From Polymyxa betae A26-41 (taxonomy: Eukaryota > Protista > Endomyxa: Phytomyxea): DNA of 64,000 bases. Shown piece after piece: positions 1-11,750 of this stretch (its first letter is position 1; each line of letters starts with the position of its first letter). Below the pieces are notes generated by a model. That model was not told where the DNA came from. It saw only the letters and a program-made list of their open reading frames with translations, and did not search any database. Made by a program: the position numbers and the translations under genes. The stretch is taken from NCBI GenBank assembly GCA_003693705.1, contig RBZT01000106.1:1-64000 (forward strand), in the 5' to 3' direction.

Positions 1-112
1 GGTTCAGTTCGTGACGAAATGACTTCCTACTTCCGAATTCCCAACCGCAAAAAAAAAACAACAGAAATACAGTCGAGAAGAATTGAACTCCCGTCATGAC
101 GCTCACGCAACT

Positions 113-345
113 CCGTAGACCTTCGAATAGCCAGCGGTCTATTTCCAGGAAATTGACCGGTCTATTTAATAGATAGACTATAGACCCGCGGTGGGGCATT
201 CCGTGACGGGTCTATATTCAATAGACCTCGGAATAGACCCGCGGTGGAGATGCTCTTATGGTCCATAATGCGTCCCACAAATCCGGCCACAGTTTCATCC
301 CATTTTGGACCACAATGCACTACCAGAGTAGTCCATTTTGGATTC
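113..345. repeat. Cluster of short direct/inverted motifs (ATAGACC/GGTCTAT; CCATWWTGG-like), probable DNA-transposon subterminal region
   Basis: GGTCTAT at 136, 159 and 209; ATAGACC at 180, 221 and 233; ATAGACCCGCGGTGG occurs twice. Followed by GGTCCATAATG, CCATTTTGG and GGACCACAATG motifs. Confidence 0.55.
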
Positions 346-1874
346 ACTTTCTGGTGCATTGTGTTGAGCAAAATGGTCGATCATGAGATATCTAAAATTA
401 ATTGATTGCCAAAACAAAATGGGCCTTTAACGAATTACAGAATGTTGCTTAATGTATTATCACTATCTATCAGATTGGCGGATATTTGAGAAATAAAACT
501 TTGTATTATTAGAAATTACTAGTGCTATACGACTTCTGATTGTATGCTATGTCTACCGAATCCTAGGGGCCGACAATCACCAGCATTCAGGGACAGAGAG
601 TTCAAAAACAGTCGCGTCGGAGGCTCCAGATGCGGACGAGAACAAGGACAGAACCGATTTCTTTACTTGTCGGCTGTGACATTGTCTTCTTTCCGAACAA
701 CAGCTTTCGCACTGAAACCAATGTCAGCAGCAGTAGATCGGTAAACAGACCTATGAGTATCGAAATTTGGCATCACCCATGGATACCATTTAATCACCAA
801 GGCAGCCTACAAGAGCAGTTTCAGTGAAACAAGTTTGTCCAAAATTTCTTCAACTTAACCGCAAAAGTCGAAGAAATTTCATTGATGAGCGTCTTGAAAT
901 AGTAACCTATAAAATGATCAGCAGATCTTATTATTCAGTACAATACAGTAGTGATAAAAATGACTCCTTCCAACAATAATAACAATTAGGTAGGTAGAAT
1001 TTAAGGACATTGAAAAATAAGCCCAATTTGTAACACCAAATTGCAAATACTTAAACAGTTATAAAGATAAAAAAACAGGATAACGATGACTGCTCACAAT
1101 CTGATTAAGACCCTAACTGATCGCAAATCGCAATGATACTCTTTCAGCCTATAGTTGCAATCCTTGTAAACTGAGCTTTACCTAAACACACTTTCAATAA
1201 TGAGTCAGTTATCAATATAAACATACTTTTGGTGACAACTAGAAATCAATCGTTAGCAATAAAGCTCTTTGAGACCTGTTTATGGCTCAGTTTGATGATG
1301 TAAAAAAATCTTAATACTGAAGGAGGTCCATTTACCGAACATCAGGGCACCTTCGCCTAGTACTTAACCTCACCGATGATGAGCACGTCCATCAGTCTGC
1401 TTTTCTGTCAATCAAGACATCAGCCAGCCCTTTCGCCGATGCTCCTTCTGTTGGAGATTAGTCTTAAGTTGCAACTTCAGCGGTGCCGGCACGAGCCACC
1501 AGTACCAAAAATGTTTGTTAAATGTGGAACTCTCCCTCCAAGCGTCACGGCACGCCAAGGGACCCCTGCGACAATCTGCGAGGGCTGCGCTTGGATCGTA
1601 ATTAAATTGGCAAACTTGGTTTATCTCGCTTGTCGTCACTTTATTTCCAGAGTTATCTTATCCGTCGATATATAACCACCTGTTTTTTATTCTGAGGTTG
1701 TCTTACGAATAGGAATTTACCCTAGATTTCTTAACCTTAACATATTTATTATTAGGTCCCATCATAGAGAATATTTTTGTCCCCCCATACAATTATATTG
1801 GGAAATTACTGGAAGTTTCAAAAAATCTCTTGGATATAGTAGCATACTTGAAGAGGGAAATATCATACTCGACC

Positions 1875-2010
1875 ATGACGGGTTCCATACGGACGCGATT
1901 GACTCTTGAGGAGAAACTGGCGGTTATCGCCTCAGATTGCGGCAGCCAACGAACGTATTGAACAAAAAATCGAAGCAGTGGGCTTAGATAAGAAAACTAA
2001 TAAACAACCC
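1875..2010 (+). pseudogene. Relic N-terminus of a pogo/Tigger-type (CENP-B-like HTH) transposase
   Basis: ATG at 1875 reads MTGSIRTRLTLEEKLAVI, resembling the R.RLTLEEKL.II start of pogo-family transposases, then stops. Lies next to a pogo-type MITE. Confidence 0.45.
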
Positions 2011-2024
2011 ATATCGCTGCTTTA

Positions 2025-2168
2025 CAGTTCCTCCAATAGTGACATAGTATCACTACAAAATATTGCTCCTGTCACAAAAGCGATGTAGTGACAGGGGGTG
2101 TTACTATTAGTATATATGGGAAATATTATTGTGGAAGGAGTGGACGTCACTATTTGAAGGTGTCACTA
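2025..2168. mobile_element. Degenerate pogo/Tc1-mariner-type MITE
   Basis: Left end TA|CAGTTCCTCCAATAGTGAC; reverse complement of right end TA|TAGTGACACCTTCAAATAGTGAC. TA flanks both sides; internal AGTGAC/GTCACT repeats. Confidence 0.5.
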
Positions 2169-2264
2169 TATCGAAAGATAGTAAAAACCCAATCCTTCAG
2201 TGTTGTGTGAGAATATGTACAATAAAACTTTGCATTTATAATACCATAAAGAATTATCTGCGAT

Positions 2265-2460
2265 TGTCCATTGTGGACCATAATGGTGATCGATAATGGA
2301 GGGACAACCCGATAATTCATGATTTCCATAATGGACCATAAAGGGTTGCGTAAAGACCCATTTTGGAATTCCATTATGAATTTTATAGATGTTCCATTAT
2401 GTACCATAATGGGACGTGTACTTAAAATTCCCATCATGACCCATAATGGACCACACAGCA
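2265..2460. repeat. Array of CCATAATGG-type quasi-palindromic motifs
   Basis: Repeated CCATAATGG, CCATTATG, CCATTTTGG and GGACCATAA; related to the motifs at 258-345. Confidence 0.6.
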
Positions 2461-2511
2461 AATCATAAAGGAAATACGCAAACAATTCTCCGCCATGATC
2501 CATTTATGATT

Positions 2512-2604
2512 TACTTGCGCGGTGTGTACAAAACTAAAACTGTGGTGGTCCCGCAGAAAACGGTAGTTTTAAGAAAACTACAGTTTTGTACTCGTGTTTC
2601 AAGT
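2512..2604. repeat. Small foldback / inverted repeat
   Basis: TACTTG...GTACAAAACT and AGTTTTGTAC...CAAGTA form the arms. Confidence 0.5.
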
Positions 2605-3951: not shown

Positions 3952-5945
3952 TCACGAAAACGTCGAAACATCACTATCCTCGCAGGAAACGTTCTGCTCA
4001 GCAAATTTCACCCGATTACCAATCTGTAATCTCGTCAATCGGGCCTTGTTCCATCGACCATGCCCTCCTTCCTCTTTCTGCTGAACGACCGGCGTTGTGA
4101 TGGCGCCGTTCGACATGTGATAGGAGCCGGCCATGACCGGAGCAAATACAGATGGTCCATTCTGGACGAGGTTCTGGGCGTCCACGATCCCGATCAACGA
4201 CGGGTGCAGATTATTGATGCCGACGACGACACCCTGTCCTGACATATATTGGGCCTCAACAGGCGCCGACGACGCCTGATTCGGTTTACGTCGTATCCAG
4301 CAGCAGATAACACTGCAGACGGCCGACACCAGCAAGCAGACACCTGCTACAACCAACAAAGGGCTGTTAAATAACACACCAGATTTCGACGGTGACAACG
4401 ACGACGATGATGGTGTCGGACATTGGCTCGGGCTGATGACGTAATTTGAGCCACAGTTGACCGCAAGAACGCCGATCGTCTGGACAGCGACCGGCGGCGC
4501 GCTGACCCAGACCAGCAGGCTGCTGGAGCGCAGGTCGCTGCCCGGAATTTGGATCTGCTGATTGAATTCACCGGCAAGGAGTGTAGCATCTGGGTCGTTG
4601 ATGATGTCTGGTAAGGCAATGAAGGAGAGAAGAGTAGACGATGATGTTTGCTGTTCGAATTGAACAGAAGTGAATCTTGCTGTAGATACATGTAATGCCT
4701 GACTCATAGATTTAATAAATGATGTGATCATTGAGGTCTTGGTTGGTTCTGTAAGCCCTAATGTTCGTAGACCAATTGTTAACGAGATCTGCCAAGCGTT
4801 CCAGCTTTGGGTTGTTTTAGATGATATCGATGGTGACCTAAAACAGCTGAACATTTGAATATTCCATGAAATAGTAATGAATACATGATCGAAAATCTGG
4901 TCGAGGGCGTCACATCAACCGATTGAGTATTCGTAGATGATGGTGGGATCAATACCCACGTCGACGCCGCTATTGGAGGTGATGATGATGGCGCCAATAA
5001 CCGTGCAGAACATGTCATCTGGATGGCGATCCATTTGAGATTGCCAGGACATGAATCCGAGAGTAGAAAATTAATGGGTGGTATGGTACATGTGTTCAGC
5101 CCTATACAGAGATGGTTGAAAGCAGATATGACTCGATTATGATCTAAGTCGCAGTTCGGATTAGGAGTTATATCAGGCCAGACCCCAATGGGGCGACCCC
5201 AATATGCTTTCGTTACATTGCTAATATATCCATCATCCATACATGATACATTCGAGTTCGAGATAGACCGTTCAAAGCCAAGGACGCCCAGCTCGTTGCC
5301 AACCTGCCACGAATTCGTGCTGGGCGGCAGGTTCCAGGTTCCATAGTCATAATCAAGACTGCTCAATGCCGTATCGAATATACGTAATGCTGTGAGATAG
5401 AGCGGGATTGAATCTGGTGATGCCATCGACACAATCGGCGCCACGATCACGGCTGTACTGGAAGGCAGCATGTTGCCGACCGGCCCGAATCCGACCACAC
5501 TGCGACCCTGCGTCACATTCACACTGGAATAATAGAGACTGACGTATCTGGATGGGCCATTAACGATGGTGACCCCAAATGAGAACCAGGTATCGAGTGT
5601 AATTCGAGGTCCAATCATCATTTCAGTACCAGCAGTGGTAGAGATATTCACTGCCAGATACTTGTCGTTCAGGATATAAACTTTTGGCAACGAATAGCTG
5701 GGCGATGACTCCGGTTGAACTGTGAACAGCAGTCGAATCGGCTGCGACAGCGTCGAGCGAGCTTGGGCAAACCCGTGATATGAAATGGTCACCGTGCTGA
5801 TAGATTTCATCGACGCGAAGGTCGGGTTCGGAATAATGTTATCGCTGCTGGTACGATATGGATCTTGAAACACTTCGATGTAGGCGGCCGGGACGAACAC
5901 AATACTACCTGTAATGATAATGATGAGAATAACCTGAGCATTCAT
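3952..5945 (-). CDS. Type I membrane lectin-receptor-like protein, paralog A (SP, LamG-like, SUEL lectin, S/T stalk, SEA-like, TM, tail with RVKF)
   Basis: ORFs 4779-5945 and 3952-4854 join in frame through a GT-AG intron at 4838-4884. Hydrophobic N-terminus; YWGR...DSCPGNLKW..MTC; TM LLVVAGVCLLVSAVCSVICCWI followed by RRK. Confidence 0.85.
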
Positions 5946-6437
5946 TTACAGGTTGATTGCAACACCGCTTTCAGATACTAAGGAACGGAGAGGTCGGCTG
6001 GTACACGCCCATCCCTTCTACAAAGCGTGTAATTCTCGTATTTGTCGGTGCTATTCCATTCTGGTCATCGATGTAGCAGATGTTCTCATTGTTTCCTGGA
6101 TTCATAAAAATGAGCAAGGCTGCTATAGCTGCACGATATAGCAGGCATCAAGACCGCATGGTGTTAGAAACTGTCACAATTCTGGCGACAGCAATGTAGT
6201 GAATGAACAAACCACGTACATGCACTTTTCGCGACAAACCTCCTCATGATGAATCGATGTATCATGACATCAACTGACTATTTAACGTAATGAACATCGA
6301 GTTTTTACTATCTATTTATATATTGCATCCGGTCGGAATGCCAGAATTACGTACTTGTTCTAGTCATGTTATTCAGCAGCTGAGATTAGAGACCGGAATA
6401 TTGCTTAGAAAAGCAGGAAATTGTTCCAATATGAGCA

Positions 6438-8585
6438 TCAGTCACTATCACCAAGGACAGCATGAGAATTTTGTACATCAAAGTGAACACGAGCTCCAGG
6501 ATGTGATTTATCGGATCGAGATCGTTTACGTCGGCCAGGCGAGGGCGGTGGCCGTGGTGAGGGCGGACGTGGTGAGTGCTGCCGTGGTGGCGCTTCCGAA
6601 TTTAAAGAAGGCAGTGCGACGGCGGACATGTGATGCATGTTGCCTGCCCTGGGAGACATCGGCACCTGTCTTTCTTGAAAGACGTTCAAGAACGACGGAT
6701 GGATCGGATACAAATTGTTCGGGACGGCGACGCCAATTGATGGTGCCGAGGCATGCGACGCCGCCTGTGCATACTCCAGTCCTATCGGCTTTCGTTGATA
6801 CCAACAATACAGCCCGCCACAAACACCAGCAATCACCAAGATAAAGATGGTAGCGAGAGCAATAAACATGTAAATGTAGGCCGTACTGGCTGTTGGACCA
6901 GCACTCGATGCTAAGGCAACAGCTGGGCATGCGTTAGGGCTGATGACGTACGAGTTCCCGCCACAGTTAATGACTCGCAGACCGATGGCCTGGATGGCGA
7001 CCGGAGGGCCGGCGGCATAAACTAATAAAGTTCCTGATCTTAGGTCGCTGCCTGCAATCTGCATCTGCTGCGTGAAGCTTGCCACAACGGCGGTGGCGTC
7101 CGGGTCGATGGCGTTCGGCAAGGCCACGAACGATAATAATGTGGAGGAGGAGGTCTGCTGCTGGAACTCTATCAGGGTGAATCTAGTAGGAGGCACATAC
7201 AGAGCTTGGCTCATATCATTAATGAAACCGGATGTAAGGGCGTTCTGAGTTGTATCGCTGATGCCCAAGGTCTTGAACATGATCGTCAATGAGATTTGCC
7301 AAGCGTTGTAGTTCGATGCACGTTTGAAAGAAGGCACCCGCCTGTGTCATAGAACTTCAGCGAGGATTTTAAGTTTTTGATAAAATTGTGAGCATGTCAG
7401 AAGTCTTGAACAAGGAAAACAAGGAGCGCGGAAATTGATTGCTTACACAGAAGGAATATATGTAGAGTTGAGAACAGCAGCCGGTATCTCCATCGGACTA
7501 GCAGTTCTTTGATTCGAAGCCTTTGGCGCCAAGGATTCAGTGCCAGACCTTGCACTCGGAGCAACAGCTGAAGAAGGCGCAGCGGTTGGCGTGGAGGTCC
7601 TGTTGGGCCAGGTCCATAGTCCAGCAATGGATGTTGAGCAGGTCATGGAGACGGCTACATACTTGATAGTTCCTGGACATGGATCTATTGTATAATCTCT
7701 CACACTCTGTGGTATGATACATGATGGCTTGGAAAGGCACGCAGCCTCCACAGTCGCCATAGTCAATGTACTATTAGCATTACATAGAGGGTTGGCTGAT
7801 ATCTGAGGCCAGACACCTTTTGGATGGCCATACAGCGCTTGGCGGATGGCAGTGATCCAGCCATTCCCGGCGCATGAAACATTCGTGCTGGATGCGGCTT
7901 GCTCAAAACCTGAGACGCCGAGGTTGTTGCCGATTTGCCAGACGTATGTCGGGGGCGGGTTCGCCCAGAGGTCGTTATCGAATCCTGCTTGTGAAAGCAC
8001 CGATTCGATAACATGTAATGACATGAGATAGACTGGGACCGGATCCGTTATTGGCGATAATTCAAGCGCTTGAACGACGGCCGTGCTGGATGGCACCATA
8101 TTGCCTTTCATAGTGTATTGCATTGCGACCGAGGCTGTTGAGTTTAAATACGATATGTAGAGAAGAATGCTGCGTGAATCTGCATTGCCATTATTGGCAA
8201 TGGCGATACCGAATCCAAACCAGGAATCGAGCGGAACTTTGGGGCCGATGAAGGTTTCGTTGCCGAACGTCGTGGTGACGGTCGCAGCTAGATTACTGCT
8301 ATTCACGATGGCGACGTTCGGCAGCATGTATTGTTTAGAGGAAACCGGATGGACTGAGAACAGCAGACGAGATTGCAACGTCGATGTTGAGGGCACCTGT
8401 GCAAATCCTTTGTACGAAATTGCCACAGTACGGATAGATGTCATGGATCGAAAAATTGGGTTCGCGAGGACGCTCTGGGCATCGACCCGATACGGATCGC
8501 CAAAAAGCTGCATCTCGGCATTGATCAGCACGACCCCAACGCTGATTAATATGATCAAACCGGACATCTGATGCCTGGGGGACAT
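6438..8585 (-). CDS. Type I membrane lectin-receptor-like protein, paralog B
   Basis: Intron 7342-7446 joins ORFs 7443-8651 and 6438-7337. Start probably 8585 or 8567. LYGH...DPCPGTIKY..MTC is a SUEL signature; TM helix; Pro/Arg tail with RVHF. Confidence 0.85.
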
Positions 8586-9160
8586 ACCATGAGATTGTCT
8601 TCGGCTACCCGTCCTTCTCAAAAAGAACGTTCGTAGCGGTCTCAATTGCATCGTTGGAGTGTAATCTTAGCAGTCAGTCATAAAGGCAGCAGGGAACTGA
8701 TTTATGGAGCAACAGGTGGTGAAGCCAGGTGTTTTTATTATATAGCTCTCATCTCTGGAAATACATTTTATATATTTCACATTTGGAGAGTCGGTTGCCT
8801 ACGAGGCAAAGGCTAACGGTTCCATCCTTTCCAAATCGCAACCGGTGAATCCAGTAAGGTCGTGTGGCGGATGTCAAGTAAGACAAGGCGTTCTGTTGTT
8901 GTATTGATTTATATATGGATTTTTTGATTTCCATTCGCTTGGGTGAGAATGCAGTATTCAGAATGCTAAGACGACATAATGCCTATGGTTGAGGTGTCAT
9001 CAATAGACTTATCCATTTTAATACTACAGCTGCCGAGTAGCTTGGATGATCACTGTCGTAGCTAGCAGAAATCTAATGCTGAAAGTGATATAGGACGACA
9101 TCGCACTTGAGGGTATCATTTCTGTCAAAAAGTATCAAATAACGCTGAAGAGTCAAAGAT

Positions 9161-11750
9161 TCAAGAAAGCGTTGTGAAATATGAATAGCTTTCCGTAGCA
9201 TAGGCTGCGGATCTCTGCCGGGTTGGTCCTGGTTGGAATCGTTGCAGTGGCTGGGATAACGATGGGGATCCTTTCATTGATCCTGGCTGACTTGCAGCAT
9301 GTGATATTTGACTAATATTGGACTGAATCACTGGATTCGACATAAAATGCAAATGTGCTGGTGGTACAATCGCACTGTTCGATTGATGATGTGTGTTAAC
9401 CGGTGACGTCGCTAATAACGAGCCGTGAAAGAAGTTTTGTCCATCCATAAACAAAGGAGCATGCGTCGGCTGGAAATTGATATTTGATCCGACAGCCACG
9501 CCGCTACCGGTGGATAAAAAACTGGAGTTTTTAGGGCCCGTTAACTGCGAAAATCCCTGAGGGTGTTCAGCTTTCATTGTCCTTCTTCTACACCAGCACA
9601 GACTACCACCGATCATCACAACCAGTGAGATGATGAGGCATGAGCCTGCGATCAACAAATAGGAATTGCTGGCGATAAAAGAGGAAGGCAGCGATGGTGA
9701 TGATGTTGGACATGGACTCGAGCTAAGCACGTACGTGTTGGAACCACAGTTTGCAACACGGACGCCTGTAATATGAAGGATAACAGGAGATTGACTGGAC
9801 CAGATTAATAGAGTCCCTGCTCTGAGATCACTTCCTGAAAGTTGAATCTGCTGCGAAAAGCTGGCGACCAAACCGGTGGCATCCGGGTCAGTGGCATTCG
9901 GCAGAACCACGAACGATAATGTAGTTGAAAATTGCTTTTGATCTTCAAAGTCCATCATAGCAAACCTGTCAATGTGCTTGTTGTTAATGACAGATGGCCG
10001 TGTGGCGAGTTATGCAAAGATAACAAACCTGGTGGGTGGGACGCTTAGAGCTGTGCTCATATCATTAATACAGGCAGCGAAGAGACTATTGCGGGTCGTA
10101 TCAGTGATGCCTGTTGTTCTTAAACCGATTGCCAAAGATATCCGCCAGGCATTATAATGTGATGCCGTTTTCGACGACGACGGTGCCCTAAACAAAAATG
10201 GTGATATAGTCAGTGTTATTCGGAATTGACAATGGGCAATCAGCTATCCCCCAAGAATTCAATAATAGAATGGCTTACATTGATAAAGAAAAACTGTTAA
10301 TCAGCGATTTGCTACTGCTGGGTGACAATGCAGCGCTTGAATACACAGCCGTTGTTGGACTAGATACCTTATTCGCAAAGCTTGAAGGGAACAGCGTCGA
10401 AGAAGGCATCGCAGTAGAAGGTGCTATCATAGGCGTCGGCTTCTTCGAGCTTGACGAAAGCCTTGATGAGGATGGCGAACTTAGCGCAGGCTTCGATGAT
10501 AATGACGAACTTAACGCAGGCTTCGATGGTAATGACGAACTTAAAGCGGAATTCGATGAAAATGCCGAACTTAACGAAGGCTTCGATAACGTGGTTGGCG
10601 TTATCGAGGAGCTAGACGACGCAGATTTGCTTGGCGATTCTGAGGAGGGTTTTGATGATAACGGTAAGGAACTCGATGTCTGTGATACTGCCGATGATGC
10701 CGAAGTCGAGCATGTTAACGACGCTGCAATCCACTTCTTAGCGCCACTACATGGATCTCCATAGTCGGAATTTCTCTGTGGTAAGACACACGAGTTCTTG
10801 TTAAGACATGCAGCCTTGACAACAGAGATTGTGGTTGCAGTATCAGTATTGCATGCCGACCTGGCTGTGATGTTGGGCCAAACCCCAATTGGACGACCCC
10901 AATACACTTTGTTCACACTGGTGATTCGCCCGCCCCCAGCACAAGCGATCGTATTATCAGATGTGCGTTGTTCAAAGCCGAATACGCCAAGCTCAGTGTC
11001 CATTTGCCAGGTGTACGTATTAGGCACGACCATCCATGTGTAATAATCTGAGGATGAATCAGATCCCGATTCTACAAAGATAAAGAGCTTACTAACCGAA
11101 CCAGTTGGTCGTTAATGCCGATGAAGAGATACGTAACGACGTTAGATAGGACGGAACTGGAGCCATCGATGATGGCGACAAAGCTGGTGCTATCGCCACC
11201 GCCGTATTGGATAGCAACATATTGCCTTTAGGCGTGTATTGTATGCTGACACTACTGGCATTATCGATATTGGAGTAGTATAATAAGACATAACGCTGAG
11301 ATGGTGTTGCACTATTGGAGATTGTAATGCCGAATGAAAACCAAGTGTTTAGAGAGACGCTGGGCCCAATGAATGTCTCAAGGCCGTTCGTAGTCGTGAT
11401 ATTGACAGCCAAGAAGTTCTTGCTCGAGACATAGACGTAGGGCAGCACGGTCGCGCTAGTCGACGTTGGACGCACAGAGAATATCACCCGAGGCGATGAT
11501 GTTGATGTCGAAAGAATCTGTGTAAATCCTATGGGGATTCAAGGTCAATATTAACATTGGGATGATGGAATGGTTCAAAGATCTGACCCTGATATGAAAC
11601 AGCAACCGAGTTGATTACTAGCATTGCAGCATACTTCTGGTTGGGAACGACGCTGCCGGCAACAGATCTGTAAGGATCACCGAACAATTCGGTGAAATCT
11701 TGAGCGGCAGCCAAGATCGCCAAGCTGGCGATTGTTACGAGAGCATACAT
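9161..11750 (-). CDS. Type I membrane lectin-receptor-like protein, paralog C (long Ser-rich stalk)
   Basis: Five exons join in frame through introns 11529-11587, 11048-11096, 10188-10278 and 9966-10028. Signal peptide MYALVTIASLAILAAA; YWGR...DPCSGAKKW; TM helix followed by RRR. Confidence 0.85.
10477..10590. repeat. 30-bp coding minisatellite (~4 units) in the Ser-rich stalk
   Basis: GAACTTAACGCAGGCTTCGATGRTAATGAC-like unit repeated; encodes SKPALSSSLS-like decamers on the minus strand. Confidence 0.85.

What the first reader, a model, noticed from the sequence alone, without database searches (positions are those of the whole stretch)
3952..11750. Tandem family of single-pass glycan-sensing receptor-like proteins (LamG-like + SUEL lectin + mucin stalk + SEA-like + TM)
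Seen: three head-to-tail minus-strand paralogs share one domain order but are very divergent. Each has a signal peptide and a beta-rich ~200-aa domain with LamG/ConA-like hallmarks (WF.FG.TI..., LYY, L..LRI..ALS). A 6-Cys domain with (Y/W)G(R/H) and D(P/S)C.G..K(W/Y) follows, then an S/T stalk, a ferredoxin/SEA-like segment (AWQISL.I...M.S.AL.V...RF), a short Cys pair, one TM helix and a disordered tail. Established: YGR and DPC..T.KY are SUEL/rhamnose-binding lectin motifs. Inference: this is a diversified surface adhesin/receptor array for host cell-wall sugars such as galactose/rhamnose pectins, expanding beside a TE-rich edge. I do not recognise this architecture.
Basis: partly seen in the sequence, partly recalled or inferred. 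Interest (0 to 1): 0.85.

Follow-up and report, generated by a model that had tools for sequence, protein, structure and literature searches.

The report
Lectin-headed mucin-stalk surface receptors, Polymyxa
Three neighbouring genes of the sugar-beet root parasite Polymyxa betae encode membrane-anchored surface proteins with two sugar-binding-type domains on a mucin-like stalk above an animal-mucin-like (SEA-like) base; they belong to an undescribed family of about 20 genes that probably recognises or sticks to glycans.

Summary
Window 3952-11750 (minus strand) carries three intact head-to-tail paralogues with phase-consistent GT-AG introns. Each has a signal peptide, a ConA-like beta-sandwich, a SUEL lectin domain, an S/T/P stalk, a ferredoxin-fold juxtamembrane domain with a Cys pair, one TM helix and a tail.

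- **SUEL:** above Pfam's gathering cut-off in all three genes.
- **N-domain:** AlphaFold2 (pLDDT 91.6) gives a ConA-like fold, nearest CBM40, pentraxin and LamG (Z 11-15.5).
- **Juxtamembrane domain:** pLDDT about 97. Nearest solved folds are SEA and SEA-like domains of Trop2, MUC16, CELSR1, SorCS2, TMPRSS6 and cadherin-23 (Z 6-8.5). It lacks the G/SVVV cleavage motif and gets no Pfam SEA hit.
- **Genome:** Polymyxa betae (1,001 contigs, 27.09 Mb).
- **Family size:** about 19-20 members in clusters. The same stalk, SEA-like and TM cassette also carries pseudo-GH18 heads.
- **Relatives:** seen in two or three other organisms, one probably Plasmodiophora brassicae.

Gal-lectin enrichment in plasmodiophorids is already published; I found no description of this architecture. 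Sugar binding, ligand and life stage are inferred. Earlier first-stage notes flagged the same family on other contigs of this genome.

Verdict: real, a new variant of a known kind.

The parts
3952..5945 (-). Gene A, 648 aa: exon 1 5945-4885, 47-nt intron 4884-4838, exon 2 4837-3952
   Evidence: ORFs. Splice sites and phases read. Paralogue matches.
5010..5246 (-). Gene A SUEL lectin domain
   Evidence: Pfam PF02140, 31.7 bits against a cut-off of 31.4, residues 234-312 of the exon-1 ORF.
4420..4812 (-). Gene A SEA-like juxtamembrane domain with Cys pair
   Evidence: Aligned to the folded domain of gene B, 45-61% identity among the window paralogues.
4303..4359 (-). Gene A transmembrane helix
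   Evidence: Best 19-aa hydropathy window, mean Kyte-Doolittle 2.84.
6438..8567 (-). Gene B, 674 aa from the Met at 8567: exon 1 8567-7447, 105-nt intron 7446-7342 (GTAAGC..CAG), exon 2 7341-6438
   Evidence: ORFs. Splice sites and phases read. The upstream in-frame ATG at 8651 precedes a non-hydrophobic leader, so 8567 is the likelier start.
7953..8516 (-). Gene B ConA-like (CBM40 / pentraxin / LamG-like) beta-sandwich
   Evidence: AF2 pLDDT 91.6. VIA Z 15.5 to 4c1w, 13.8 to PTX3 and 12.1 to laminin LG. Foldseek E about 1e-7.
7629..7952 (-). Gene B SUEL lectin domain with its N-terminal WQ..G..FE extension
   Evidence: Pfam PF02140, 43.9 bits. phmmer against PDB rhamnose-binding lectin 5h4s, E 1.2e-15. 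VIA Z 12.5 and rmsd 2.4 A over 99 residues to 5iaz.
7447..7628 (-). Gene B S/T/P-rich stalk, continuing for a few codons after the intron
   Evidence: 40% S+T+P over 58 aa.
6927..7319 (-). Gene B SEA-like juxtamembrane domain (beta-alpha-beta-beta-alpha-beta plus a hairpin with the Cys pair)
   Evidence: AF2 pLDDT about 97 over residues 1-130. VIA top hits are Trop2, MUC16 SEA, CELSR1, SorCS2 and TMPRSS6 SEA, Z 6.7-8.5.
6795..6890 (-). Gene B transmembrane helix
   Evidence: AF2 helix at residues 144-175. Hydropathy 2.71.
6441..6794 (-). Gene B disordered cytoplasmic tail with the C-terminal GARVHF...DSD motif
   Evidence: pLDDT below 55. Motif scan.
9161..11750 (-). Gene C, 775 aa, five exons: 11750-11588, 11528-11097, 11047-10279, 10187-10029, 9965-9161
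   Evidence: ORFs. Splice sites and phases read. Every junction restores the paralogue consensus.
10710..10946 (-). Gene C SUEL lectin domain
   Evidence: Pfam PF02140, 39.4 bits.
10279..10700 (-). Gene C long S/T/P stalk (141 aa)
   Evidence: 60% S+T+P.
9704..10165 (-). Gene C SEA-like domain, split by intron 10028-9966
   Evidence: Alignment A3.
1..2600 (.). Dispersed repeat DNA at the contig end, next to the gene array
   Evidence: About 40 further matches on other contigs, 71-100% identity.

Best explanation
The three genes encode type-I single-pass surface glycoproteins of the plasmodiophorid Polymyxa betae.

Proposed layout: a two-domain head (ConA-like sandwich plus SUEL/rhamnose-binding-type lectin domain) sits on an O-glycosylatable S/T/P stalk of variable length. 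Below the stalk is a compact SEA-like juxtamembrane domain closed by a disulphide-type Cys pair, then one TM helix and a disordered cytoplasmic tail. In many paralogues the tail ends in a conserved R-x-E-R-h-x-x-G-x-R-[VDE]-[KHR]-F ... DSD motif.

Proposed mechanism (inferred): the head binds a glycan (galactose/rhamnose-type or other) on the host root surface or on the parasite's own wall or neighbouring cells. The stalk projects the head through the surface coat. The SEA-like base works as in animal mucins and SEA-like receptors, as a mechanically or proteolytically sensitive hinge that permits shedding or signalling. The tail motif couples to trafficking or signalling.

The roughly 20 clustered, fast-diverging paralogues provide a repertoire of heads on a more conserved base. 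The same base also carries catalytically dead GH18 (chi-lectin-like) heads. This marks it as a general display cassette for carbohydrate-binding modules.

Shown here: gene structure, domain folds and family size. Inferred: sugar binding, ligand, location, cleavage and signalling.
For: Gene models are intact with consistent intron phases.

Domains:
- SUEL_Lectin is above the Pfam cut-off in A, B, C and in all 16 paralogue pieces that hold the region.
- PDB sequence matches to rhamnose-binding lectins, E 1e-15 to 1e-8.
- AF2 head model, pLDDT 91.6 and pTM 0.87. The ConA-like domain scores Z 15.5/15.0/14.0 to sialic-acid-binding CBM40 modules and 11-14 to pentraxins and LamG. The SUEL domain scores Z 12.5 to 5iaz.
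- Laminin_G_3 is sub-threshold in three paralogues (best E 5.9e-5) and above cut-off (44.4 against 27.6 bits) in the homologue P0029.
- AF2 base model, pLDDT about 97 with beta-alpha-beta-beta-alpha-beta topology followed by a TM helix. Seven of the eight best VIA hits are extracellular SEA/SEA-like domains, most of them membrane-proximal. Weak concordant leads come from KIAA0319 C-terminal domain Pfam hits (E 0.0011), KIAA0319-like Atlas neighbours and a mucin-16 SEA cluster.

Sugar-binding determinants defined for latrophilin RBL (PMC2430599): Lys 16/16, candidate Glu 13/15, Gly 11/16, aromatic residue 16/16.

Family: about 19-20 members in clusters on C872, C841, C857 and C244. Across all paralogues the folded domains average about 33-36% identity, against about 18% for TM and tail. 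Among the three window genes the SEA-like base is the most conserved part (about 55% against about 45% for the heads). The same cassette sits behind pseudo-GH18 heads. The tail motif is also kept in P0144 from another organism.

Context: SEA-like juxtamembrane domains act as proteolytic switches in animal receptors (PMC6586460). Gal-lectin domains are enriched in plasmodiophorids (PMC4471660). What mediates zoospore attachment to roots in plasmodiophorids is unknown (PMC9944879).
Against:
- The domain has 6 Cys rather than the 8 of animal RBLs. The essential Glu follows Phe, not the first Cys, so its equivalence is inferred from sequence only.
- Tyr63 is replaced by Trp in genes A and C.
- The closest solved relative (rice BGal1 C-terminal domain) bound no carbohydrate, and receptor-borne RBLs often bind proteins (PMC2430599).
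- SEA-like Z-scores (7-8.5) lie in the range the tool calls 'middling'. There is no Pfam SEA hit and no G/SVVV motif.
- The tail motif is absent from gene C and from many paralogues. Some read-through tails may contain unrecognised introns.
Confidence: 0.6

Rival explanations
1. Surface stress or wall-integrity sensors. The lectin head anchors in the parasite's own cyst or resting-spore wall or glycocalyx. The glycosylated stalk acts as a spring, and the SEA-like base and tail report mechanical load. This would be analogous to yeast Wsc1/Mid2/Msb2 and animal MUC1, with no host ligand involved.
For: The layout is the same as in those sensors: Cys-stabilised head, S/T stalk, single TM and a short tail with a conserved motif. 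The SEA-like base is the best-conserved part among the window paralogues. The sister cassette carries pseudo-GH18 heads that would suit the chitin-containing plasmodiophorid wall (chitin biology in PMC4471660).
Against: About 20 divergent heads are more than a housekeeping sensor needs. No WSC domain is present. No Pfam or structural link to Wsc, Mid2 or Msb2 was found. There are no expression data.
Confidence: 0.15
2. Protein-binding rather than sugar-binding receptors or adhesins. As in latrophilin, EVA-1 and PKD1L2, the SUEL domain would serve as a protein-interaction module, for example for cell-cell recognition when plasmodia or sporosori form, or at zoospore fusion. The ConA-like domain would behave like LamG or pentraxin protein binders.
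For: Receptor-borne RBLs often lack sugar binding and are proposed to bind proteins (PMC2430599). Rice BGal1 C-terminal domain bound no sugar. Tyr is replaced by Trp or Phe in 9 of 16 paralogues. ConA-like neighbours include LamG, pentraxin and neurexin LNS domains.
Against: The Lys that cannot be substituted and the candidate Glu are kept in nearly all paralogues, which is not expected if sugar binding had been lost. The best ConA-like neighbours are true carbohydrate-binding modules (CBM40). The sister family uses another glycan-type head.
Confidence: 0.15
3. Constitutively shed surface-coat mucins. The proteins would mainly build a protective or lubricating glycocalyx, or act as decoys, with the SEA-like base allowing release. 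The lectin domains would cross-link the coat.
For: Mucin-type stalk plus SEA-like base directly after a disordered segment, the arrangement that gave constitutive proteolysis for MUC1 in the shedding assay (PMC6586460). Stalk length is highly variable at 37-141 aa.
Against: The stalks are short compared with true mucins. There is no G/SVVV autoproteolysis motif. The conserved cytoplasmic motif argues for an intracellular function.
Confidence: 0.1

Closest known systems
Animal membrane mucins and SEA / SEA-like receptors (MUC1, MUC16, Trop2/EpCAM, dystroglycan, cadherin-23 MAD, KIAA0319)
   Same: Type-I topology. A ferredoxin-fold SEA-like domain lies next to the membrane and is preceded by an S/T-rich stalk. 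These domains are the best structural neighbours of the window's base. There is a faint Pfam similarity to the KIAA0319 C-terminal domain.
   Different: No sequence-level SEA membership and no G/SVVV motif. There is an extra C-terminal beta-hairpin with a conserved Cys pair. The head is ConA-like plus SUEL. The lineage is Rhizaria, not Metazoa.
EVA-1 / EVA1C (C21orf63) and latrophilins: metazoan receptors carrying SUEL/RBL domains
   Same: A SUEL/RBL domain at the N-terminal end of a membrane receptor ectodomain. EVA-1 is also single-pass (PMC2430599).
   Different: EVA-1 has two RBLs and no ConA-like or SEA-like domain. Latrophilin is a 7TM receptor with olfactomedin and GAIN domains. The animal RBLs have 8 Cys; this family has 6 and resembles the plant beta-galactosidase type.
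Plant GH35 beta-galactosidase C-terminal lectin-like domain (rice OsBGal1 C-terminal domain, PDB 5IAZ)
   Same: Best solved match of the SUEL domain: Z 12.5, 26% identity, with a shared WQI..G..F N-terminal extension.
   Different: It is attached to an enzyme, not a receptor. At the position of the family's conserved Glu the rice domain has His (alignment), and it bound no sugar.
Fungal wall-stress sensors and signalling mucins (Wsc1, Mid2, Msb2)
   Same: Working principle (from general knowledge): a Cys-stabilised or glycosylated head on an O-mannosylated S/T stalk, a single TM and a short signalling tail.
   Different: No WSC domain, no detectable homology and a different lineage. This is an analogy only.
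Gal-lectin (PF02140) domain expansion reported for Plasmodiophora brassicae and Spongospora subterranea (Schwelm et al. 2015)
   Same: Same domain family and same clade. The window family is part of that enrichment.
   Different: The paper reports domain counts and a domain phylogeny. It does not describe the ConA-like + SUEL + stalk + SEA-like + TM architecture or the shared cassette.

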